Shown here one piece after another: positions 3,377 through 50,799 of a stretch of 64,000 nt of DNA. Location: IMG/VR virus record IMGVR_UViG_3300032236_002285, positions 186,001 to 250,000 of that record. One strand, 5' to 3'. The notes below the pieces were generated by a model. It had not been told where the DNA came from. It saw nothing but the letters and a program-made list of their open reading frames with translations, and did no database searches. Both the position numbers and the translations under genes were made by a program. How positions within the stretch are numbered: position 1 is the stretch's first letter; every line of letters starts with the position of its first letter.

Positions 3377-3859
3377 ATGGTCCTAAGCAAAGCGTTGAAA
3401 ACTATTAAAATAAAGTTAGTCGAACCAACTCCAAATAAGTTAGCTTTTGTCAAATTGATAAAAGATTGCAGTGGCCTTGGTTTAAGAGAGGCAAAAGATT
3501 TATGTGATAATATACATGGTAATCCTGAAAAAGTACATGAGATGCCTATTCGTGACTGGGAAAGCATGGATTATAATACCGGTAAAACAACACCTGCAAT
3601 TACTGATTTTAGAAAAAAGTTCAACACTGAGATTAAAAATGTTGGTGGTAGATTTATTGTTAATGGTGGTGTTCAATGGGATAGAAATGTAAAAATGTTG
3701 ACACTTGGGATAGCTGAAAAATCTGATTATATCGAATTTATGAAAGATTATATTTTAAATAAATTTGGTAATTCAGAAGATTTACTTACCTTTGTACTCG
3801 ATAAAATTTCTAAAGAAGATTTACAAGAAATTTTTAATAAAACTAATATAGAATTATAA
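3377..3859 (+). CDS. protein with ribosomal L7/L12 C-terminal-like domain
   Basis: KLAFVKLIKDCSGLGLREAKDLCD matches the L12 CTD signature; start reassigned to ATG 3377. Confidence 0.7.
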   Translation: MVLSKALKTIKIKLVEPTPNKLAFVKLIKDCSGLGLREAKDLCDNIHGNPEKVHEMPIRDWESMDYNTGKTTPAITDFRKKFNTEIKNVGGRFIVNGGVQWDRNVKMLTLGIAEKSDYIEFMKDYILNKFGNSEDLLTFVLDKISKEDLQEIFNKTNIEL

Positions 3860-4255
3860 ATGGCTAACGCTTATATTCACTCAAAGTCCTCTGCTCGAAA
3901 GTTTGGAGGCGAACCAGAAGATTATCTTTCAATCCACATGAAGATGGATTGTTCTAAAGCTTATGTTGCTGATAATAGACACAGAGCACTAACACATACT
4001 AACTTTTGGATTCATGAAGTAATGATACCAATTTTTGGTTATACAATGACTAATTCGGCTGGTAAAGTTGTTTCTGTTAAAGATGTTTGTGAACAACACA
4101 TACTTGAAGATTTTGGTATGAGATTTATTCCAACAGCTCAAGATTATCTTGAAAACATGGAATTTAAAGATTGGATGCAAAATGGAATAAAAGGTCATCC
4201 ATCTTCTTTTGAGAAAATTTCACAAAAAGGAAATATTAAAGTTAATCTCGACTAA
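3860..4255 (+). CDS. DUF6915-like conserved phage protein
   Basis: MANAYIHSKSSARKFGGEPEDY...HRALTH...EQHILEDFG pattern. Confidence 0.65.
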   Translation: MANAYIHSKSSARKFGGEPEDYLSIHMKMDCSKAYVADNRHRALTHTNFWIHEVMIPIFGYTMTNSAGKVVSVKDVCEQHILEDFGMRFIPTAQDYLENMEFKDWMQNGIKGHPSSFEKISQKGNIKVNLD

Positions 4256-4256
4256 T

Positions 4257-4982
4257 ATGATAGTAATTTGCAAAAGAGCAACAAAAAGAATTGTTAAAGG
4301 AGTTCGCTACGAGACGGGTAACCTATGGAACTCTGGAAACAATGCAAAATGGAGAGAAGGCAAAGTGGAAATTTTAGGAATTGGTATATTTGTAGTTGAT
4401 AACTTCACTGATACTAATGGTAATCCATTACCTAAAATTGACATTAGTGTACCTCGTCAAGTATCTGAAATATTAAAATATGAAGATGTAAAAAAAGGTG
4501 ATATCTTAGTTTGTACATCTGATATGTATAAAACCTTAGGTAAAGGTTGTATGTACCAAGTTGAATTACTAAATCAAACATCTGAACAATTAATGGGTTG
4601 GAATAAACAACCTTATACACGAGTTGAACAAACAGTAAAGTTTGTTGGTATACCTCGCACACTTAAATTTAGTGGTTGGAGATTTAGAAAATTAACTCCA
4701 CAAGAAGCTCGTGAGATTTCTCTAAATTCTGTTCTTCATGGTGAAGAACCAAAAATCACAAAGACAAAAGACATCCGTAAGATTGAAATGGCGGCTAACA
4801 AAGATTTAGAATTAATGTCTGCCATTTCAAAGTCAATAATTGACAATAATAGACACCATTTATCTATTTTAGATTGGGCTTGTCAAAAATCTAGTCAAAA
4901 TCTAGGTATAACACCTGATGATTATGTCACTCTTTTAAATATGCCTTTAAAAGATATTCTTGAAAAAATTGAAACAAAGTAA
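4257..4982 (+). CDS. hypothetical protein
   Basis: Long ORF; start reassigned to ATG 4257. Confidence 0.7.
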   Translation: MIVICKRATKRIVKGVRYETGNLWNSGNNAKWREGKVEILGIGIFVVDNFTDTNGNPLPKIDISVPRQVSEILKYEDVKKGDILVCTSDMYKTLGKGCMYQVELLNQTSEQLMGWNKQPYTRVEQTVKFVGIPRTLKFSGWRFRKLTPQEAREISLNSVLHGEEPKITKTKDIRKIEMAANKDLELMSAISKSIIDNNRHHLSILDWACQKSSQNLGITPDDYVTLLNMPLKDILEKIETK

Positions 4983-32628: not shown

Positions 32629-32714
32629 GGTGTCGTTATTGTTAACGGAGAGTCGAAAGACGAGCATCTGGCTCTGTGAAAGCCAGGGTACGGGTTCAAA
32701 TCCCGTACGACACC
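32629..32714 (+). tRNA. tRNA-His(GUG) with G-1:C73 and a hairpin insertion in the D-loop
   Basis: Loop CT-GTG-AA; 8-bp acceptor; GTC-GAAA-GAC in D-loop. Confidence 0.75.
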
Positions 32715-32720
32715 CAAGAA

Positions 32721-32804: not shown

Positions 32805-32878
32805 GGTGTATGTAGCTCAATCGGTAGAGCGTCGGTTTGTGGAGCCGAAGGTAGCGGGATCGTAACCCGTCATTCACC
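32805..32878 (+). tRNA. tRNA-His(GUG)
   Basis: TCGGT-TTGTGGA-GCCGA; G-1 and C73. Confidence 0.85.
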
Positions 32879-32883
32879 CAAAA

Positions 32884-32955: not shown

Positions 32956-32961
32956 CAACAT

Positions 32962-33032
32962 ACGTCATACAGACAAGGTGTCGGTCAGGTCTCCAAAACC
33001 TCGACGGTGGGGTTCGATTCCTCAATGGCGTG
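32962..33032 (+). tRNA. tRNA-Trp(CCA)
   Basis: AGGT-CTCCAAA-ACCT; G73. Confidence 0.8.
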
Positions 33033-33038
33033 CTAAAT

Positions 33039-33174: not shown

Positions 33175-33717
33175 ATGAAAGAGGAAATATTAAAGTTAAG
33201 AAGTGAAGGTAAGACTTTTAATGAAATAAAAGAAATACTAAAATGTTCAAAATCTACAATATCTTACCATTGTAGTGATGAACAAAAAGAAAAATCTAGA
33301 AATAGAACTAGAAAAAGAAGAGAGAATTTAATTCACTCTAAACTTGAAAGTTTTATCTATAGAAAAGAAAAAAATGTAAAAGAAGGAATAAGAAAGTTTC
33401 AAAAAACTGACTCAAATTCTAAAGGAAGGGTTAATAGTAATATTAAAACAACATTTAATTGGGTTGATGTTTTGAATAAGTTTGGTGAAAATACATATTG
33501 TTATTTGTCTGGAGAGAAAATTAACCTATATGAAGATAACTACAACTTTGACCATATTATACCAGTTAGTAAAAATGGTAGTAATAGTTTAGAAAACTTA
33601 GGAATTCTACACGAAAAAGTAAATAGAATGAAATCTGACTTATCACCAGAAGAATTAATAGAATGGTGTAAAAAGATTTTAGAGTTTAATAATTATAAAA
33701 TAGAAAAATTAGATTAA
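33175..33717 (+). mobile_element. HTH-HNH endonuclease inserted in tRNA array
   Basis: DHIIPVSKNGSNSLENLGILHEKVNRMKSD. Confidence 0.85.
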
Positions 33718-33871: not shown

Positions 33872-33958
33872 GGTTCTGTCGCTTAGCGGCTATAGCAACT
33901 GGCTTTTAACCAGTAGAGATAATGTTCTCAACCGTGGGTTCGAGTCCCACCAGGACCA
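33872..33958 (+). tRNA. tRNA-Lys(UUU) with long variable arm
   Basis: ACTGG-CTTTTAA-CCAGT then GAGA-taatgt-TCTC arm. Confidence 0.8.
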
Positions 33959-33966
33959 CTAAAAAC

Positions 33967-34050
33967 ACTCCTGTCGCTCAGAGGTCGAGAGCAACTGGCT
34001 TTTAACCAGTAGACGCAAGTCCATCGTAGGTTCGAATCCTACCAGGAGTA
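33967..34050 (+). tRNA. tRNA-Lys(UUU) with long variable arm
   Basis: ACTGG-CTTTTAA-CCAGT then GAC-GCAA-GTC arm. Confidence 0.8.
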
Positions 34051-34054
34051 CTAA

Positions 34055-34137
34055 CGATTCGTCGCATAGTGGCTATTGCACCTGACTCTTAATCAGGCGA
34101 AGAAATTCAATCGTGGGTTCGAGTCCCACCGGGTCGA
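34055..34137 (+). tRNA. tRNA-Lys(CUU) with long variable arm
   Basis: CCTGA-CTCTTAA-TCAGG then GAA-gaaa-TTC arm. Confidence 0.8.
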
Positions 34138-34145
34138 CAAAAAAT

Positions 34146-34251
34146 AGTCAAGTGGCGAAAAGGCGAGACGCATAAGAGTTAATCTTTTGGGGTAGACCGA
34201 AGAACCGCGAAAAAGAAGGTTCCCATACAGGTTCGAGTCCTGTCTTGACTA
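34146..34251 (+). tRNA. atypical tRNA-Leu(UAA)-like gene with very long variable region
   Basis: AGTCAAG/CTTGACT acceptor, A73, Leu-like D arm, weak anticodon arm GT-TAA-TC, ~35 nt variable region. Confidence 0.55.
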
Positions 34252-34260
34252 CAAAAATAT

Positions 34261-34404
34261 GGAGAGAGTAGCTCAGTTGGTTAGAGCACGTATTCATTCT
34301 CTGACAAGGATTCTCTGATTATGGTCAACATAATTAGTAGTGATGTTAAGAGATACTTCGGTCTGTTAAACCCGTGGTCGTAGGTTCGAGTCCTACCTCT
34401 CTCC
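34261..34404 (+). tRNA. tRNA-Asn(GUU) interrupted by ~69 nt structured insert
   Basis: Removing 34291-34359 restores CGGGT-CTGTTAA-ACCCG; extra G-1:C73 pair. Confidence 0.7.
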
Positions 34405-34432
34405 CAAATATTAGATTATTAAAAAAATAAAA

Positions 34433-35065
34433 ATGGAAATAAAATTAGAAAGTACTTACAAAGGAACAAGGATTCTTTTTAAGGACAGCGCTAAAAATAA
34501 AAGAAAGTTACTAAATAGCATGATTGATATTTTAGAATCATATGGTTATCAGGAAATAATGATACCTATTATTCAAAAACAAGAAACATTTCAGTCAAAA
34601 GTTGGTGATGAAAACAGAAATATGATGTTTAACTTCAAAGACAGAGGTGATAGAGATTTGTGTTTATCTCCAGAGTACACGGCAATTGTTCAACAATTAT
34701 CAAGTGATAAAATGAAATATGATAAAGATGTAAAAATGTTTTATATCGGTGAATGTTTCAGAGGAGAAAATACACAATCTGGAAGATGGAGACAATTTAC
34801 ACAATTTGGAGTTGAAGTTATAAATCCAAGTAAAGATTATACTGATGAAATGGTTGAAATTGCCAGTAAACTAATTGAGTTAGTTACAAAAAATTATGAA
34901 GTAAATCTGGAAACTACAAGAGGACTTGACTACTACAAAGGTGGAAAAGGATTTGAAATTGCTTGTCCCGAATTAGGATCATCTAAGCAAATTTGTGGAG
35001 GTGGTTCATATGATGGTGGTATTGGATTTGCTGTTGGTGTAGATAGATTACTATTATGTAAATAA
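34433..35065 (+). CDS. minimal histidyl-tRNA synthetase-like catalytic core (no anticodon-binding domain)
   Basis: Motif 1 GYQEIMIPII, LSPEYTA, motif 2 FRGENTQSGRWRQFTQFGVE, GLDYY, motif 3 GGGSYD-GGIGFAVGVDRL; only 210 aa. Confidence 0.8.
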   Translation: MEIKLESTYKGTRILFKDSAKNKRKLLNSMIDILESYGYQEIMIPIIQKQETFQSKVGDENRNMMFNFKDRGDRDLCLSPEYTAIVQQLSSDKMKYDKDVKMFYIGECFRGENTQSGRWRQFTQFGVEVINPSKDYTDEMVEIASKLIELVTKNYEVNLETTRGLDYYKGGKGFEIACPELGSSKQICGGGSYDGGIGFAVGVDRLLLCK

Positions 35066-35074
35066 AAATAAATT

Positions 35075-35202
35075 GGGGATGTAGCTCAGTGGTAGAGAAA
35101 ACTATCTCTTTTGAAAATTTACCTCATAAGAGTGTTGATTGAGAGAGTTACTTCGTATATTTTGAAATTATAAGGTCGTGGGTTCGAATCCCACCATCCC
35201 CA
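35075..35202 (+). tRNA. tRNA (anticodon probably UGA) interrupted by ~55-60 nt structured insert
   Basis: GGGGATG/CATCCCC acceptor, canonical D and T arms, insert ending TTACTTCG; anticodon assignment uncertain. Confidence 0.6.
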
Positions 35203-35281
35203 CAAAAAAGATTTGGTAAATCAATAAAAAAGATTTACTTTTGTAAAAACAAAGAAAAGAAAATTAATATATAATAAAGTT

Positions 35282-36292: not shown

Positions 36293-37801
36293 TTAACTAA
36301 CCATTGATATCATAAACCAAGATCCTCCTCCATTTTTAAGAATTGTTATTGAACCATAATTACTATTTATGGTTTTTGCACCAGTTGAACCATCAATAGT
36401 TTCACCTAAATGTGGAGTTATAGTAATATTATTAGAACTTGCATTACCCGCTTCGTCTTTTATAATAACTATTTTACCATCTGTTAAAGTAGCAACACTT
36501 GCTAATGTTATACTAACAGATGTAGCAGTAGTATCTACCGGCCAATACTCTGGTTGAATTGATGGTAGTGCTAGAGGTGTTAATATAAAGCCAGATGGTG
36601 CTGAGATTGATGGATTAACAATAGGTCCGCCACTAACACCTGAAACACCTGAAGTACCGGATGAACCAGATGATCCGGAAACACCAGTTGATCCAATTTT
36701 ACCATCGTAATTCCAACTTATAGTATAAATATCTTCATCTATCAAAGTTACATTTGCTGGAGTAACCGATGATGCTGAACCTGATATTGTAAGATATGAA
36801 TAACCACCTGATACATTTTTAGCAACACTACCTCCTGTATTTTTGTTAATGGTATAGATACCTATAGGATCATTTGCTCCAAATCTTTTCAATTGAATAT
36901 AAGCCACTCTTCCTCTAAAAACTTGGTTGTATAAATCATCTAATAAATAATAATAGTCTGTTCCAACATAATCAAGTTGACCTATTGTTATTTGAGTTAA
37001 TGTTGTTACGTCAGTTGTATCAGTGTGAAAATGGTTAGGGTTATAAAGAGAACTTGAATACTTCCATCTACCTGAAAGTGCAGCACCATCATTACCACTT
37101 ACTCCTGATGAACCGGATGAACCCGATACACCACTTGTGCCTGAACTACCTGATGTGCCTGAACTACCAGATGAACCTGATGAACCTGATGAGCCAGACT
37201 GACCCATAGTTACCCAACTAATTGAATAGTTTTTACCACCTATTGCCATTCCATTTGATGAAACCTTAGTACAGTTAAAATTCCAAGAAGAACCCATATC
37301 TAAACCATTATTAACTTGGTAAATAACATAGTTATTAGCAGCATCGATCTGAGTTATCTTCATATATCCTTGATTTGGATAAGAAGTTAAAAAACTTCCT
37401 AAAGATGCTAACCAACTTGTGGCATCACCGCTTTCACTATAATAGTTTATATTAACATTATTACTTACTTGAGAAAAATCTGTATTACCTAAATTATATT
37501 GACCATTAATAGAATTGCTACCATAAACCCATCTTAGTGTATTAGAGCCATCAGCGCCACTTAAACCCGAAGTTCCTGATGAACCATTAGGACCAGTAGC
37601 ACCAACATGACCTGAGGTACCTGATGAACCTGATGAGCCAGATGACCCACTTCCACCACCACCTGAACCTATTACGGTAACATTACCTGATGTATCTTTT
37701 TGTTTAAGTACTCCGTCTAGATCTAGACCCATTAAAATACCTGATGACGGAGTTGCTGCTCCGGACATATCAATATAAGTAGAAAGTGAAATTAAACTCA
37801 T
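36293..37801 (-). CDS. Ser/Gly-repeat fibre-like (tail fibre/decoration) protein
   Basis: Three blocks of SGSSG/SGTSG/SGVSG repeats; TAATATATA at 37826-37834. Confidence 0.7.
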   Translation of the reverse strand: MSLISLSTYIDMSGAATPSSGILMGLDLDGVLKQKDTSGNVTVIGSGGGGSGSSGSSGSSGTSGHVGATGPNGSSGTSGLSGADGSNTLRWVYGSNSINGQYNLGNTDFSQVSNNVNINYYSESGDATSWLASLGSFLTSYPNQGYMKITQIDAANNYVIYQVNNGLDMGSSWNFNCTKVSSNGMAIGGKNYSISWVTMGQSGSSGSSGSSGSSGTSGSSGTSGVSGSSGSSGVSGNDGAALSGRWKYSSSLYNPNHFHTDTTDVTTLTQITIGQLDYVGTDYYYLLDDLYNQVFRGRVAYIQLKRFGANDPIGIYTINKNTGGSVAKNVSGGYSYLTISGSASSVTPANVTLIDEDIYTISWNYDGKIGSTGVSGSSGSSGTSGVSGVSGGPIVNPSISAPSGFILTPLALPSIQPEYWPVDTTATSVSITLASVATLTDGKIVIIKDEAGNASSNNITITPHLGETIDGSTGAKTINSNYGSITILKNGGGSWFMISMVS

Positions 37802-45625: not shown

Positions 45626-45711
45626 GCTACGGTATGCAAACCGGAATAAGCGACCAGACTTTCAATCTGGACATCGAAAGATGTGTGCGGGTTCGAGCCC
45701 CGTCCGTAGTA
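45626..45711 (+). tRNA. tRNA-Glu(UUC) with long variable arm
   Basis: CCAGA-CTTTCAA-TCTGG then ACATC-GAAA-GATGT. Confidence 0.8.
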
Positions 45712-45718
45712 CAAATAA

Positions 45719-46688: not shown

Positions 46689-46692
46689 ATTT

Positions 46693-46776
46693 CGGCAGGT
46701 ACCGATGGTGTCTTATACACACTATAACCGTAGCGGGAAGTTGAAAACGTGGGTTCGAATCCCACCCTGCCGACCA
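46693..46776 (+). tRNA. D-arm-deficient tRNA-like gene, anticodon UAU (Ile-like)
   Basis: CGGCAGG/CCTGCCG acceptor, A73-CCA, canonical T arm, GGTGT-CTTATAC-ACACT, long V region, almost no D arm. Confidence 0.5.
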
Positions 46777-46836
46777 ACTGAGAAAACAGTAAATCGTGAG
46801 CCAACACTAAAACCATCCCACCAGGATGTAAAACTC

Positions 46837-46908: not shown

Positions 46909-46916
46909 CAAATTTT

Positions 46917-46991
46917 GGGGTCACATGTACCAAGGCTAGGCGATGATGCTTTGCAAGCATCGTGTGGTGAGTTCGATTCTCACTGGCTCCA
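46917..46991 (+). tRNA. tRNA-Ala(UGC)
   Basis: GATGC-TTTGCAA-GCATC; G3:U70. Confidence 0.85.
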
Positions 46992-47010
46992 CAAAAAATG
47001 AATAGTAAAA

Positions 47011-47461: not shown

Positions 47462-47605
47462 AAGATAGTAGTAATGTACGAGTGTTACTTCGTATTTCCA
47501 ACGACTAGTTCAGGTTCGAATCCTGGGTTCCGCTCAAATGATAATATGCGGGATTAGTGTAACGGTAGCACAGTAAAAACACACTCAGCAAATTTTCTCT
47601 ATCTT
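47462..47605 (+). tRNA. circularly permuted tRNA (Gly-type acceptor) flanked by the split insert module
   Basis: 3' half (anticodon, T arm, GTTCCGC-T) at 47491-47534 precedes 5' half (GCGGGAT plus D arm) at 47548-47574; flanks pair AAGATAG/CTATCTT and GAGTGT/ACACTC. Confidence 0.7.
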
Positions 47606-47835: not shown

Positions 47836-50799
47836 ATGAAAAAGATCCTAAAGTTCTTACTAGTGTCATTGACTCTAGTATTTTTTGTGCCTAAACAAGC
47901 ACAAGCCTCTCATTGCGCTGGAGCTGAATTATTATTCCAATGGCTTCATGACTCAACTTATCAACTTTATTACAAGTTTTACCGTGATTGTGCCGGTATT
48001 AATGAGCCAACAAATGTTACAGTTTGTTGTAGTAACAATTGTAATTCAACTACAATCAACGTAATTTTAAACAAAGTTACTACACTTATTCCTCCTGGTG
48101 TAAATAATGGAAATGAAGTTGCTAGAGTTTGTCCTGGTATACATACCACTTGTGGTAATCCAGCCGGAACAACACCTGGCTACAGAGAATGGTGGTATGC
48201 TAATACTGTAACTCTACCATCAAGATGTAACCACTGGACTTTTTCAGTAAGTCAGTCAGCTAGAAACTCTGGTATTACTAATTTATCTAATCCAGGTTCT
48301 CAAAATCTTTATACAGAAGCCACACTTGATAATAGAGATGCTCAAGGTGATACCTCACCTTTCTTTTCTGTTAAGCCGGTCCCGTATATCTGTGCTAATA
48401 TACCATACACTTATAACAATGGAGCTTATGACTTAAATAACGACTCTATGGTGTTTAAAATTGTTCAACCAAATGGTGGCTCAGGTTGTCCTCCAACCAC
48501 GTCAGCCATTGCTTTTGCTAATACAACACCAAGTTTAAATCTAACTGATAATCCTTTACAAACAAACAATACTTTTTCTATAAATGCTCAAAATGGATTG
48601 ATGAGTTTTACTCCAGCTGGAACACAAATTGCAGTTGTAACTATTCAAGTAGATGAATATAGAAATGGTAGAAAAATTGGTTCTGTAATGCGTGATATTC
48701 AAATTATTGTTTTGTCTTGTAATGTTCAGCAACCAGAAGTAAATATATCTGCTGCTTCTTTAAATAATGCAACTCTTGATAATAATGGAAACATTACAGC
48801 TTGTGCTGGAACACCTTTTAGTTTTTGTTTTGATGCTACAACACCAGATTCAAATGGTATTTTACTCGCATCTGATAACTCAAATATTGTAATGCCTAAT
48901 TCAGTAGTATCATATACTAATCAAACTACAGATACGGTTACTGGTTGTTTTTCTTGGTGGCCTTCTGTGTATGATACAGGTTATAAAATTTTTACAATAA
49001 CTATAATGGATTCATCTTGTCGTCCTCCTGGCTTAATGTTTTCACAAACATTTACCTTACCAATTTATGTTTGGCCTGCGACTAATATTCTAAGTGATAC
49101 CACAATCTGTAGAGGTGGTGCTGCAAATTTACTTGCTGTTGGTGGTGGAAATTTTATTTGGTCGGTTTTACCAGGAGGTTCTGCTTTATCAACTTTAAAC
49201 TGCACAAACTGCTCAAATCCAGTTGCTACTCCAATAATCACAACTCAGTATGTAGCTACATCTCAAATAACAAATGCTATTTGTAAAAATAAAGATACGG
49301 TAACAGTAGCGGTTATTCAACCATTTCAGATTATACTACCTGATACAACAACATGTGTTAATAATTCTTTACAATTAAATGCAGTAGTTAATACAACAAA
49401 TAATTATACTATATCCTGGACACCAAATACTTATTTAAGTAATGCTGGTATTAATAATCCAATTGTAACACCACCATCTGGTCAATCATTGATAACTTAC
49501 TATGTTAAAGTTTCTTCAATTGGTTCATCAGCTTGTTCAGTTACAGATACATTCAAATTAAAAGTTTTACAAGGATTTACTATCTATAATCATGATACAA
49601 CAATTTGTCTTGGTAAATCAGTAAATATAGCCGGCTCTGGTGATGCTTTATATAATTATACTTGGACACCAACCAGTGGTATAAGTACAATACTTACACC
49701 ATCAATAACACCAAATGTAGTTACAACAACAACGTATATTTTAACAGGTAAATATCCTGGTTGTAAAGATTCTACTAATAAAATTAAAATCACAACAGAA
49801 CCTGTACCAACTGTAGTAGCTGGTGCTGATAGACAAATATGTAGTGGTGATACTATTCATCTTACACCTTTAGTTACTCCAAGTTATCCATATGTTTACA
49901 CTTGGACACCAGGATCTTCATTAGATAATCCAAATTCTGAATTTGCTATCTTTTCAGGATTAATCACAACTCATTTATCACTAACTGTTAAATCACCAGT
50001 TGCTAATTGTTCATCAGCTGATAGTTTAATTATTAATGTAGTTAAACAATCTTTCTTAAAGGTTTCACCACAAGACACTTCAATTTGTCCATCTGATACA
50101 GTTATGATTAAATTAACCACACCTAATGATAAGTTAGTTATTTTTAATTGGAGCCCTCATAATTTTATCAGTGATTATAATTCAGTTAATCCTTATTTAT
50201 ACCCACCAACATCAATGGTTTATACTGCTTGGGCTACTGATACAGCTGGTTGTAATGATACTATATCAGCTTATATTGAAATTAGACCAGGTGCTGTAAT
50301 TGACATGCCTACATCAATTGGTTTATATCCTGGTGATTCTTATCAAATAACACCTCAAACTAACTGTACTAAATTTATTTGGTTTCCATCAAGTGGTTTA
50401 AATTATGACTCATTATCAAATCCAACAGTGACCAACTTAGGAGTTAATACTAAGTATATAGTTATTGGTCAAACAGAATGGGGATGTAAAGTATCTGATT
50501 CAATAAATGTAATGGTTATTAATGATTCTTATATTGATATACCTAATGCTTTTTCACCTACAGGTGATCACAATAAAACACTAAAAGTAATTCATTTAGG
50601 TTCTGCTACTCTTGAATATTTTAGAATATACAATAGATGGGGTAATAAAGTTTTTGAAACAAATGATATTAATGTTGGATGGGATGGTACTTATAATGGT
50701 CAAGCTCAATCACAAGGTGTTTATGTTTATGAAGTAAAAGCAATAACATATAAAGGTAGGGTCTTTATTAAACAAGGCAATATAACTTTGATGAAATAA
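47836..50799 (+). CDS. secreted adhesin-like protein with T9SS type-B (gliding motility-associated) C-terminal domain
   Basis: Signal peptide, ASHCAGAE start, Ig/PKD-like repeats, IPNAFSP...FRIYNRWGNKVFE...WDGTYNG...GVYVY...GNITLMK. Confidence 0.9.
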   Translation: MKKILKFLLVSLTLVFFVPKQAQASHCAGAELLFQWLHDSTYQLYYKFYRDCAGINEPTNVTVCCSNNCNSTTINVILNKVTTLIPPGVNNGNEVARVCPGIHTTCGNPAGTTPGYREWWYANTVTLPSRCNHWTFSVSQSARNSGITNLSNPGSQNLYTEATLDNRDAQGDTSPFFSVKPVPYICANIPYTYNNGAYDLNNDSMVFKIVQPNGGSGCPPTTSAIAFANTTPSLNLTDNPLQTNNTFSINAQNGLMSFTPAGTQIAVVTIQVDEYRNGRKIGSVMRDIQIIVLSCNVQQPEVNISAASLNNATLDNNGNITACAGTPFSFCFDATTPDSNGILLASDNSNIVMPNSVVSYTNQTTDTVTGCFSWWPSVYDTGYKIFTITIMDSSCRPPGLMFSQTFTLPIYVWPATNILSDTTICRGGAANLLAVGGGNFIWSVLPGGSALSTLNCTNCSNPVATPIITTQYVATSQITNAICKNKDTVTVAVIQPFQIILPDTTTCVNNSLQLNAVVNTTNNYTISWTPNTYLSNAGINNPIVTPPSGQSLITYYVKVSSIGSSACSVTDTFKLKVLQGFTIYNHDTTICLGKSVNIAGSGDALYNYTWTPTSGISTILTPSITPNVVTTTTYILTGKYPGCKDSTNKIKITTEPVPTVVAGADRQICSGDTIHLTPLVTPSYPYVYTWTPGSSLDNPNSEFAIFSGLITTHLSLTVKSPVANCSSADSLIINVVKQSFLKVSPQDTSICPSDTVMIKLTTPNDKLVIFNWSPHNFISDYNSVNPYLYPPTSMVYTAWATDTAGCNDTISAYIEIRPGAVIDMPTSIGLYPGDSYQITPQTNCTKFIWFPSSGLNYDSLSNPTVTNLGVNTKYIVIGQTEWGCKVSDSINVMVINDSYIDIPNAFSPTGDHNKTLKVIHLGSATLEYFRIYNRWGNKVFETNDINVGWDGTYNGQAQSQGVYVYEVKAITYKGRVFIKQGNITLMK

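What the first reader, a model, noticed from the sequence alone, without database searches (positions are those of the whole stretch)
34261..35065. Minimal HisRS core next to a GUU-anticodon tRNA with a His-type G-1:C73 acceptor
The 210 aa protein keeps class II motifs 1-3 and GLDYY but lacks the anticodon-binding domain. Established: HisRS identity depends mainly on G-1:C73. The interrupted tRNA immediately upstream has an Asn anticodon but an 8-bp acceptor with G-1:C73, like both true tRNA-His genes. Inference: an anticodon-blind enzyme might charge it with His, or serve damaged or variant His tRNAs.
Basis: partly seen in the sequence, partly recalled or inferred. Interest (0 to 1): 0.6.

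Follow-up and report, generated by a model that had tools for sequence, protein, structure and literature searches.

The report
Minimal phage HisRS beside Y-RNA/tRNA chimera
A huge phage encodes a stripped-down histidyl-tRNA synthetase (catalytic core only) right next to an RNA that is not an intron-bearing asparagine tRNA but a tRNA-shaped Y RNA carrying a Ro60-binding arm and a histidine-type acceptor end, so the two could work together but nothing yet shows they do.

Summary
The sequence facts hold. ORF 34433-35065 is a 210-aa HisRS catalytic core with every catalytic and acceptor-end-contacting residue but one. It lacks the anticodon-binding domain, the insertion domain and an 11-residue loop. 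It belongs to a conserved family of 205-218 aa (over 1500 metagenomic relatives, huge phages, none found in bacterial genomes) and is predicted to dimerise. The RNA at 34261-34405 does have G-1:C73; in this genome only the two tRNA-His genes share that.

The 69-nt "interruption" (34291-34359) is not an intron. It is a Y-RNA (YrlA-type) Ro60-binding module. The same motif lies twice just upstream of the phage's own TROVE/Ro60 gene, and in at least 119 viral loci, 75 with a TROVE gene nearby. So the RNA is a tRNA/Y-RNA chimera with a free His-type acceptor end, and its CUGUUAA hairpin may correspond to YrlA's variable arm.

The gene adjacency is not conserved: relatives carry the chimera without the enzyme and the enzyme without the chimera. 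The most likely clients are the phage's own tRNA-His genes. Histidylation of the chimera is possible but untested. No RNA data were informative. Interest is moderate to high; this is a new variant of known kinds.

The parts
34433..35065 (+). Minimal HisRS: 210-aa class II catalytic core with no insertion domain and no anticodon-binding domain
   Evidence: AF2 model pLDDT 81, Foldseek top hits E. coli / T. thermophilus / S. aureus HisRS with TMq 0.72-0.80; homodimer score 0.89 against best control 0.00
34538..34579 (+). Motif 1 (residues 36-49, SYGYQEIMIPIIQK), the dimer interface
34640..34648 (+). D70-R71-G72 loop, equivalent to the 70'DRG72' tripeptide that contacts G-1 across the subunit in T. 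thermophilus HisRS
   Evidence: PMC4357726
34739..34822 (+). Motif 2 and its loop (residues 103-130). R110, E112, Q115, R118, R120, Q124 and E128 correspond to E. coli R113, E115, Q118, R121, R123, Q127 and E131. N113 replaces E. coli R116
34919..34936 (+). HisRS-specific motif RGLDYY (R163 = E. coli R259)
34997..35053 (+). GGGSYD histidine-binding motif and motif 3 (GIGFAVGVDRLL; R205 = E. coli R311)
34261..34290 (+). 5' part of the chimeric RNA: G-1 (34261), acceptor 5' strand (34262-34268), U8 A9, D arm (34271-34287), A26, C27, G28
34291..34359 (+). 69-nt insert, a Y-RNA (YrlA-type) Ro60-binding module. It has an apical hairpin at 34315-34337 and a conserved 3' motif at 34336-34360 that ends in GAGATACTTCG
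   Evidence: apparent compensatory variants 34322/34330 and 34293/34353 in relatives' contigs
34360..34405 (+). 3' part of the chimeric RNA: hairpin with loop CUGUUAA (34363-34369), UGGUC, T arm (34380-34396), acceptor 3' strand (34397-34403), C73 (34404), C74 (34405)
35075..35203 (+). Second open-acceptor tRNA/Y-RNA chimera (A73, no G-1; insert ends in GAGTTACTTCG; loop UUUGAAA)
32805..32879 (+). tRNA-His(GUG) with encoded G-1 (32805) and C73, 1.55 kb upstream of the enzyme gene
32629..32715 (+). Second tRNA-His(GUG) with G-1:C73 and an expanded D region; missed by ARAGORN
47466..47600 (+). Closed/permuted YrlA-type Y RNA. Order: motif, hairpin, T arm, acceptor 3' strand, 14-nt linker, acceptor 5' strand, D arm, 3' strand of the Y stem

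Best explanation
The ORF is a functional, dimeric, minimal histidyl-tRNA synthetase. It is a class II catalytic core that makes His-AMP and transfers histidine to RNAs with a G-1:C73 acceptor end, and it cannot read the anticodon or the tRNA body.

It is one member of a family conserved in huge phages. The host here is probably a Bacteroidota bacterium. The family forms part of a phage translation kit that also includes many tRNAs and other aaRS genes. Its most likely clients are the phage's own tRNA-His genes. These include body-variant forms: an expanded D region here, and long variable arms in relatives.

The RNA 27 nt upstream is not an intron-containing tRNA-Asn. It is a tRNA-shaped Y RNA, a circular permutation of the YrlA design. 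It has an open acceptor stem, and a Ro60 (TROVE)-binding stem-loop emerges between the D arm and an anticodon-like hairpin. Its acceptor end has the His identity set, so it is a plausible secondary substrate of host HisRS or of the minimal enzyme. A dedicated enzyme-RNA pair is not supported.

Shown here: homology, residue conservation, fold, distribution, the identity of the insert, and the lack of conserved adjacency. Inferred: enzyme activity, which RNAs it charges, Ro60 binding, and survival of G-1.
For: Enzyme:
- hisS is the best family (158 bits against 106 for hisZ).
- E83, T85, R113, E115, Q118, R121, R123, Q127, E131, R259, Y263/264, E270, Y288 and R311 (E. coli numbering) are invariant.
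- The contacts to G-1 and the 3' end (K10, D70-R71-G72, E112, Q115, R118, R120) are invariant. Adenylate synthesis alone would not need them.
- The model has the HisRS fold. The homodimer scores 0.89 against a best control of 0.00, through motif 1 and the DRG loop.
- More than 1500 relatives; the 120 listed are 210-235 aa (nearly all 210-220), and the viral and phage-record loci give ORFs of 196-234 aa, most 205-218. No close relative was found in 185,579 species genomes.

Context:
- True tRNA-His with G-1:C73 lies within about 0.3-2.5 kb in 7 of 23 related loci and 1.55 kb upstream here.
- The phage also has a 421-aa LeuRS-like gene without CP1 directly after tRNA-Leu, and a GlnRS directly after three tRNA-Gln genes.

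RNA:
- GAG[AT]TACTTCG occurs 3 times in 476 kb (about 0.13 expected for GAGATACTTCG alone, so roughly 0.26 for both variants). The sites are upstream of the TROVE gene, this insert, and the second chimera.
- The insert shares TGGTCAACATAATTA and GAGATACTTCG with the RNA upstream of the TROVE gene.
- The TROVE protein is confirmed (PDB 9l5y, E=1e-22).
- The motif plus T arm occurs in at least 119 viral loci. 75 of them have a TROVE gene, at a median of about 240 nt; 0 of 20 control loci do.
- Most copies are closed YrlA-like RNAs, matching the published YrlA architecture (PMC4201824; bioRxiv 10.1101/312249).
Against: - No activity data exist.
- The R116 equivalent, one of the arginines at G-1, is N in this copy (K, R, S or N across the family).
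- Loss of both the insertion and anticodon-binding domains should weaken tRNA binding. aaRS paralogs that lose tRNA-binding domains often take non-tRNA functions.
- Enrichment of tRNA-His near the gene is modest (8 of about 70 neighbouring tRNAs) and the loci are not independent.
- Rfam's YrlA model does not reach threshold on any of these RNAs.
- A sequence-only profile of TROVE-adjacent motifs recovers the second chimera and the TROVE-upstream copy, but not this insert.
- This copy lies about 124 kb from the TROVE gene.
- Which helix (Y stem or CUGUUAA hairpin) occupies the anticodon-arm position could not be resolved.
Confidence: 0.6

Rival explanations
1. Dedicated pair. The minimal HisRS exists chiefly to histidylate the adjacent G-1:C73 Y-RNA/tRNA chimera, giving a charged Y RNA, and the two genes are functionally linked.
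For: The enzyme gene starts 27 nt after the RNA. In this phage, other aaRS genes sit directly after cognate tRNA genes (GlnRS, LeuRS-like). G-1:C73 recurs in 4 of about 14 open-acceptor chimeras from different phages, with non-His loops (GUU, GUU, AUG, GAU). This suggests selection on the acceptor end independent of the loop. HisRS is one of the least anticodon-dependent synthetases and charges microhelices and viral tRNA-like structures (PMC4357726). M. smegmatis YrlA is cut by RNase P and receives CCA (PMC4201824).
Against: Relatives' contigs carry this chimera directly next to the second one, with no enzyme gene between them. The closest enzyme homologs (86-87% identical) have no such RNA within 2.5-3 kb. 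None of the five contigs carrying related chimeras encodes the enzyme, including one that is 96% complete. A related GUU chimera has A-1:U73 instead.
Confidence: 0.15
2. The protein no longer charges tRNA. It could be a histidine-activating or histidine-binding paralog with another acceptor or a regulatory role: HisZ-like, an amino acid:carrier-protein ligase, a protein-modifying enzyme like EpmA, or a decoy for host factors.
For: It has lost both tRNA-binding accessory domains, as HisZ, EpmA/PoxA and AsnA-type paralogs have (general knowledge; HisZ in PMC9437257). The R116 equivalent is not conserved. It falls below the hisS cut-off.
Against: Motif 2 and motif 3 arginines and R259 are kept. 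By established knowledge, HisZ does not form adenylate. Residues that contact G-1, C74 and A76 are invariant. The phage has no hisG. The gene sits in tRNA arrays in about half of the related loci.
Confidence: 0.15
3. The 69 nt are a true intron removed by a protein or ribozyme. The product is a GUU-anticodon tRNA with His identity that inserts His at Asn codons, or is charged by AsnRS.
For: Removing 34291-34359 gives a perfect cloverleaf (stem CGGGU/ACCCG, loop CUGUUAA, 5-nt variable loop). The D and T arms match an uninterrupted tRNA-Asn in a relative (L029:1495-1569).
Against: The position (28/29) is non-canonical. No group I or other ribozyme match was found. The geometry does not fit a bulge-helix-bulge site (inspection). 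The insert is conserved with compensatory changes and is homologous to TROVE-adjacent Y RNAs. No RNA-ligase homolog was found in this genome using the relatives' ligase-like ORFs as queries. C73 is wrong for AsnRS; the other Asn tRNAs here have G73.
Confidence: 0.05
4. The RNA gene is a dead tRNA disrupted by a mobile or junk insertion, and its G-1:C73 is accidental.
For: ARAGORN (without its intron option, -i) and Rfam at gathering threshold do not call it. It is the only GUU RNA with C73.
Against: It is conserved with the insert in relatives at about 91% identity, with paired substitutions. The same design, with G-1:C73, occurs in unrelated contigs L041, L076 and L112. The fold keeps all tRNA arms.
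Confidence: 0.05

Closest known systems
Bacterial histidyl-tRNA synthetase (HisRS, class IIa; e.g. E. coli 1KMM, T. thermophilus 4RDX)
   Same: It has the catalytic-core fold; motifs 1-3; the HisRS-specific RGLDYY and GGG.YD motifs; the histidine, ATP, G-1 and CCA-end contact residues; and a predicted motif-1 dimer.
   Different: It is half the size (210 aa against about 420). It has no insertion domain, no C-terminal anticodon-binding domain, and an 11-residue loop deleted before motif 3. R116 is replaced by N. The family was found only in phage and metagenome sequences.
Engineered N-terminal catalytic fragment of E. coli HisRS (Augustine and Francklyn 1997; cited from my own memory, not retrieved here)
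   Same: It is a HisRS without the anticodon-binding domain. As I recall, that fragment still charged tRNA-His with dependence on C73, at reduced efficiency.
   Different: That fragment was man-made and kept the insertion domain. This protein is natural, conserved, and smaller.
HisZ (regulatory subunit of ATP phosphoribosyltransferase, a HisRS paralog)
   Same: It is a HisRS-like core without the anticodon-binding domain.
   Different: HisZ is about 300-390 aa, keeps the insertion region, has lost adenylation activity, and works with short-form HisG. Here the catalytic residues are intact, the hisZ score is lower than the hisS score, and the phage has no hisG.
YrlA-type bacterial and phage Y RNAs (Chen et al. 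2014, PMC4201824; Wang et al. 2018, bioRxiv 10.1101/312249)
   Same: The RNA combines a tRNA-like D arm, T arm and acceptor helix with a Ro60/Rsr-binding stem that leaves the tRNA core where the anticodon stem would be, plus a hairpin before the T arm. The phage encodes a TROVE protein. The motif is shared with TROVE-adjacent RNAs.
   Different: YrlA has a closed acceptor stem-loop, and its 5'/3' ends lie in the Ro60-binding stem. Here the topology is permuted: the acceptor end is open and the Y stem is closed. The acceptor carries G-1:C73, and the gene lies 124 kb from the TROVE gene. Rfam RF02553 does not reach threshold.
Aminoacylatable tRNA mimics (tmRNA with Ala; plant-virus tRNA-like structures with Val, Tyr or His)
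   Same: These are tRNA-shaped RNAs without a normal decoding function whose acceptor end uses an anticodon-independent identity.
   Different: Charging of the phage RNA is only a hypothesis, and its extra module binds Ro60 rather than encoding a tag or priming replication.

Membership tests
HisRS (histidine--tRNA ligase) | Class II motifs 1, 2 and 3 with the invariant arginines | tested here: met
   P45, R110 and R205 align with E. coli P44, R113 and R311; they are invariant in 21 family members
HisRS (histidine--tRNA ligase) | HisRS-specific histidine-binding motifs (RGLDYY, GGGRYD) and E83/T85/Q127/E131 | tested here: met
   only R287 is changed, to S
HisRS (histidine--tRNA ligase) | C-terminal class IIa anticodon-binding domain | tested here: not met
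   The protein ends 5 residues after the motif 3 arginine; this holds across the family
HisRS (histidine--tRNA ligase) | Helical insertion domain between motif 2 and the RGLDYY motif | tested here: not met
   About 90 residues (E. coli about 157-247) are absent
HisRS (histidine--tRNA ligase) | NCBIfam TIGR00442 curated cut-off | tested here: not met
   158.2 bits against 286.75; the shortfall is due to the missing domains
HisRS (histidine--tRNA ligase) | Histidylation of tRNA-His | not testable with these tools
   Needs an enzyme assay
HisZ | Curated hisZ model score; loss of catalytic residues; partner HisG | tested here: not met
   106 bits against a 271.65 cut-off; the catalytic residues are retained; no hisG in the phage genome. 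The host's hisG was not examined
tRNA-Asn | GUU anticodon in a 7-nt loop on a 5-bp stem | tested here: inconclusive
   The loop CUGUUAA is present, but the stem is complete only if the 69 nt are looped out. By homology with YrlA, the hairpin may sit in the variable-arm position
tRNA-Asn | G73 discriminator, as in the phage's other Asn tRNAs and in relatives | tested here: not met
   It has C73, while G73 is found in every other Asn(GUU) gene examined here and in relatives
tRNA-His | G-1:C73 | tested here: met
tRNA-His | GUG anticodon | tested here: not met
   The loop reads GUU
tRNA intron (group I, or archaeal/eukaryal bulge-helix-bulge) | Group I core, or a 3-4-3 bulge-helix-bulge at the splice sites; usually position 37/38 | tested here: not met
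   No Rfam intron or ribozyme match. At 69 nt it is too short for a group I intron. The helix and bulges do not place cuts that would yield a tRNA (inspection). The position is 28/29
YrlA-type Y RNA | Ro60-binding module homologous to RNAs encoded next to TROVE genes | tested here: met
   A sequence-only profile did not recover this copy, so the support rests on the shared 15-mer and 11-mer and on rarity in the genome
YrlA-type Y RNA | tRNA-like D and T arms | tested here: met
YrlA-type Y RNA | Closed acceptor-like stem-loop with the T arm 5' of the D arm | tested here: not met
   The acceptor is open and the arms are in normal tRNA order. The closed form is present elsewhere in the window at 47466-47600
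YrlA-type Y RNA | A TROVE/Ro60 gene in the genome, usually adjacent | tested here: met
   The gene is present at G000:96842-98293 but about 124 kb away from this RNA
YrlA-type Y RNA | Rfam RF02553 gathering score; binding to Ro60 | tested here: not met
   25 bits against 69, and over a different span. Binding is not testable here

The most novel reading that the evidence does not exclude
Huge phages make an aminoacylated Y RNA. A tRNA/Y-RNA chimera with a free G-1:C73 acceptor end is histidylated, by the anticodon-blind minimal HisRS or by host HisRS. This would couple the phage Ro60 ribonucleoprotein to charging status, EF-Tu or the ribosome, or would use the charge as a switch or a protective cap.
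Probability: 0.15. Interest if true: 0.85.

Novelty: new variant of a known kind. Interest (0 to 1): 0.62.

Why it matters
A natural, conserved HisRS of 205-218 aa would be among the smallest aminoacyl-tRNA synthetases known that keep a full active site. That bears on how much of a class II enzyme is needed for specific charging (the minimal-core or "urzyme" question). It would also offer a compact, anticodon-blind enzyme for orthogonal translation.

The RNA extends the Y RNA/YrlA family to forms with a free acceptor end of the His type. This makes the old question of whether tRNA-like Y RNAs are ever aminoacylated directly testable. It also shows that "interrupted tRNAs" in phage tRNA arrays can be Ro60-binding RNAs rather than intron-containing genes, which matters for phage annotation.

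Tried and rejected
- Intron readings. ARAGORN with introns forces a 50-nt anticodon-loop intron and calls Leu(UAA); I rejected this as an artefact. Group I or another ribozyme: no Rfam match, even at E up to 10. Bulge-helix-bulge: the geometry does not yield a tRNA.
- "Circularly permuted tRNA gene" at 47466-47600. This was my first reading. I replaced it with closed YrlA-type Y RNA after the motif proved to be TROVE-linked.
- Rfam YrlA model. It was below threshold on the window and on eight TROVE-linked loci.
- Sequence-only covariance model R1 of 60 TROVE-adjacent motifs. It found the TROVE-upstream copy (E=0.003) and the second chimera (E=0.006), but not this insert or the closed copy. The test is weak and inconclusive.
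- Public reads. One true RNA run and two probable DNA "RNA-Seq" runs gave no spliced form, no ends and no expression evidence. Joints that skip the insert belong to other, uninterrupted Asn tRNAs with different stems.
- The idea that an 8-bp acceptor stem (a -1:73 pair) is special to the chimeras. I rejected it: 35 of 53 ordinary tRNAs here also have a pairable -1:73, mostly U-1:A73.
- Exact-match search for the 3' part of the RNA in viral contigs: no hit.
- Close relatives of the enzyme in bacterial and archaeal genomes: none. This search sees only close relatives.
- RNA-ligase-like ORFs that flank the enzyme in LR756502/LR745206. They have no homolog in this genome and no NCBIfam match.
- The exhaustive protein-representative search was not run, because the operators flagged its cost and the family was already clear.
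Full report
**Where the window lies.** The window is bases 186001-250000 of a 476,236-bp viral record, estimated 97% complete. Its nearest named relatives are the uncultured huge phages LR756502.1 (642 kb) and LR745206.1 (634 kb). A T9SS C-terminal sorting domain in ORF 47836-50796 points to a Bacteroidota host. The genome carries about 63 tRNA-like genes.

**The protein.** ORF 34433-35065 encodes 210 aa.
- Family matches: the best is hisS TIGR00442 (E=3e-46, 158 bits, in two stretches covering profile 2-147 and about 232-313). hisZ scores 106 bits. Both are below their cut-offs because the protein is short.
- Structure-database matches: the best PDB sequence matches are S. aureus, E. coli and T. 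thermophilus HisRS.
- Alignment with E. coli HisS: E83, T85, R113, E115, Q118, R121, R123, Q127, E131, R259, Y263, Y264, E270, G285, G286, Y288 and R311 are all kept. E. coli residues about 157-247 (insertion domain), 291-301, and everything after 317 (anticodon-binding domain) are missing.
- Model: an AlphaFold2 model (pLDDT 81, pTM 0.81) matches HisRS catalytic domains at TMq 0.72-0.80. The PylRS catalytic cores come next.
- Dimer: the homodimer prediction scored 0.89 against a best control of 0.00. In the tool's calibration, 20 of 30 solved homodimers and 1 of 23 solved monomers reach this mark. The runs agree in at least 98% of contacts, with pLDDT of at least 86. The interface uses residues 12-17, motif 1 (40-49) and the 70-74 loop. 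Because HisRS dimers have been solved, this shows likeness, not binding.

**The family.**
- Twenty viral-contig loci carry homologs at 56-87% identity. Counting LR756502.1, LR745206.1 and Sinorhizobium phage Phosso as well, the ORFs run from 196 to 234 aa, most of them 205-218 aa, and every one ends just after motif 3.
- The word-index search found 1542 relatives at E of 1e-5 or better. The top 120 are 210-235 aa (nearly all 210-220), many from contigs of 300-640 kb, and JGI labels them simply "histidyl-tRNA synthetase".
- No close relative was found in 185,579 species genomes.
- Twenty-one members share 76 invariant positions.
- In the T. thermophilus HisRS-tRNA complex (PMC4357726), G-1 is held by Arg7 (Lys in other species), by 70'DRG72' of the other subunit, and by Arg115 and Arg122. 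The 3' end is held by Glu114, Gln117 and Arg120. The insertion-domain contacts are individually dispensable.
- The window equivalents are K10, D70-R71-G72, R120, E112, Q115 and R118. K10, D70, G72, E112, Q115, R118 and R120 are invariant in the family and R71 is nearly so (90% or more). Only the Arg115/R116 equivalent varies: N here, and K, R or S elsewhere.
- Conservation of these RNA-end contacts argues for an RNA acceptor with G-1, not merely adenylate formation.
- The phage has no hisG, and by established knowledge HisZ lacks adenylation activity (PMC9437257). A HisZ-like role is therefore unlikely.

**Genomic context of the enzyme.**
- In 12 of 23 related loci the gene lies within 3 kb of tRNA genes. 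Seven of those loci include a true tRNA-His(GUG) with encoded G-1 and C73, and several of these tRNAs have an 89-90-nt body with a long variable arm.
- Here, two tRNA-His genes lie 1.55 and 1.7 kb upstream: 32805-32879, and 32629-32715, the latter with an expanded D region.
- The same genome encodes a 421-aa LeuRS-like protein with no CP1 editing domain directly after tRNA-Leu(CAA). It also has a full GlnRS directly after three tRNA-Gln genes, and a full GluRS.
- Domain-minimised synthetases placed near cognate tRNAs are thus a feature of this phage.

**The RNA at 34261-34405.** The acceptor is 7 bp plus G-1:C73, and C74 follows, as in most tRNA genes of this phage. G-1 with C73 occurs only here and in the two His tRNAs. 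All other Asn(GUU) genes examined here and in relatives have G73. A pairable -1:73 as such is common (35 of 53 tRNAs, mostly U:A), so only the G:C identity is notable. The D and T arms match an uninterrupted tRNA-Asn of LR745206.1.

**The insert is a Y-RNA module, not an intron.** The 69-nt insert (34291-34359) lies between G28 and G29. Five lines of evidence identify it.
1. Its 3' end (a run ending in GAGATACTTCG) resembles the insert of a second interrupted tRNA at 35075-35203, and the leader of a T-arm-first RNA at 47466-47600.
Most have the order hairpin, T arm, acceptor hairpin, D arm. That is the published YrlA architecture (PMC4201824; bioRxiv 10.1101/312249).
3. 75 of these 119 loci encode a TROVE/Ro60 protein, at a median of about 240 nt from the motif. 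None of 20 control loci does.
4. This phage has its own TROVE gene at G000:96842-98293 (PDB 9l5y, E=1e-22; Rsr 2nvo, E=8e-7). Two copies of the motif lie just upstream of it.
5. GAG[AT]TACTTCG occurs only three times in 476 kb (about 0.13 expected for GAGATACTTCG alone, so roughly 0.26 for both variants): at the TROVE-upstream site and in the two inserts. The target insert also shares the 15-mer TGGTCAACATAATTA with the TROVE-upstream RNA.

Contigs of relatives carry the RNA with its insert at about 91% identity. Two pairs of substitutions fit the predicted helices: 34322 T>C with 34330 A>G, and 34293 T>A with 34353 A>T. I could not confirm that each pair sits on the same contig, except by the span of one record.

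No intron or ribozyme family matches, and no RNA reads show splicing. The RNA is therefore best read as a circular permutation of YrlA, with an open acceptor end and a closed Ro60-binding stem. Two geometries remain open: the CUGUUAA hairpin may sit in the variable-arm position, as in YrlA, or it may act as an anticodon arm with the Y stem as an extra arm.

**Are the enzyme and the RNA linked?**
- For a link: they are 27 nt apart. The phage tends to place aaRS genes after cognate tRNAs. G-1:C73 recurs in open-acceptor chimeras of unrelated contigs (L041, L076, L112) with loops GUU, AUG and GAU. Two of these lie within 700 nt of TROVE genes.
- Against a link: contigs from two runs join this RNA directly to the second chimera, skipping 34408-35075, which is the enzyme gene. 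The closest enzyme homologs have no such RNA nearby. None of five chimera-bearing contigs encodes the enzyme, although four of them are fragments. A related GUU chimera has A-1:U73.

I conclude that the adjacency is probably circumstantial within a region rich in tRNA and Y-RNA genes. Histidylation of the chimera remains a live and testable possibility.

**Verdict.** The enzyme is a new, natural minimal variant of HisRS. The RNA is a new open-acceptor variant of YrlA-type Y RNAs, not an intron-bearing tRNA-Asn.

**Limits.** There are no activity, expression or binding data. The motif used for the census came from this window. The formal profile test was inconclusive for this copy. The statement about the engineered E. 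coli catalytic fragment rests on my memory only.

Noticed in passing
window 33872-34138, 45626-45712; G000:255781-255866, 257011-257097, 257626-257710, 257997-258081, 258256-258341, 272129-272211: Many tRNAs occur in pairs: a normal version of 72-76 nt, and a version of 83-88 nt with a long variable arm and the same anticodon. The amino acids involved (Lys, Glu, Asn, Ile, Thr, Met, Gln; His in relatives L009/L011/L014/L016) normally have class I tRNAs. The purpose is unknown. Evasion of host tRNA nucleases or altered identity are possibilities.
   Followed up: partly
window 47466-47600: A closed/permuted YrlA-type Y RNA. It has a 7-bp acceptor helix joined by a 14-nt linker, so it may be an RNase P substrate like M. 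smegmatis YrlA. Its hairpin loop is AUUUCCA.
   Followed up: partly
window 35075-35203: A second open-acceptor tRNA/Y-RNA chimera (A73, loop UUUGAAA) lies immediately downstream of the HisRS gene. In relatives it directly abuts the first chimera.
   Followed up: partly
G000:96380-96510 (L191:880-1010) and G000:96842-98293: A phage TROVE/Ro60 gene, with two Y-RNA motif copies just upstream. A further motif copy lies at G000:257527, at the start of an odd 'tRNA-Leu' call.
   Followed up: partly
window 34146-34256: An unclassified tRNA-like gene with good acceptor and T arms, A73 and an irregular middle of about 60 nt. Neither ARAGORN nor Rfam calls it.
   Followed up: no
window 32629-32715; also 32957-33036, 46690-46790, 46915-46995: Several further tRNA-like genes that ARAGORN missed. 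They include a second tRNA-His with an extra hairpin in the D region, and Trp(CCA)- and Ala(UGC)-like genes with aberrant D arms.
   Followed up: partly
G000:258727-259989 (L192:328-1590): A 421-aa LeuRS-like protein (leuS_bact E=9e-119) that lacks the CP1 editing domain and C-terminal parts, directly after tRNA-Leu(CAA). It is a second domain-minimised synthetase in the same phage. A full GlnRS (G000:272259-273908) follows three tRNA-Gln genes, and a full GluRS lies at G000:262861-264483.
   Followed up: partly
L001:1858-2508 and 3393-4103; L002:3381-4094 and 4320-4970: In LR756502.1 and LR745206.1, two ORFs with KxDGxN motifs (nucleotidyl-transferase / RNA-ligase-like) flank the minimal HisRS. 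They have no NCBIfam match and no homolog in this window's genome.
   Followed up: partly
window 33175-33717: An HNH endonuclease ORF (weak matches to IscB/Cas9 HNH domains) sits inside the tRNA array between tRNA-Trp and the Lys tRNAs. It is probably a homing endonuclease.
   Followed up: no
G000:257917-257989 and 271550-271621: ARAGORN calls two tRNAs with irregular anticodon loops: a 4-base 'acat' and a 2-base 'gt'.
   Followed up: no
window 36293-37801 (-) and 47836-50799 (+): A collagen-like protein rich in GSS/GTS repeats, and a 987-aa protein with a T9SS type B C-terminal sorting domain, which is a clue to a Bacteroidota host.
   Followed up: no
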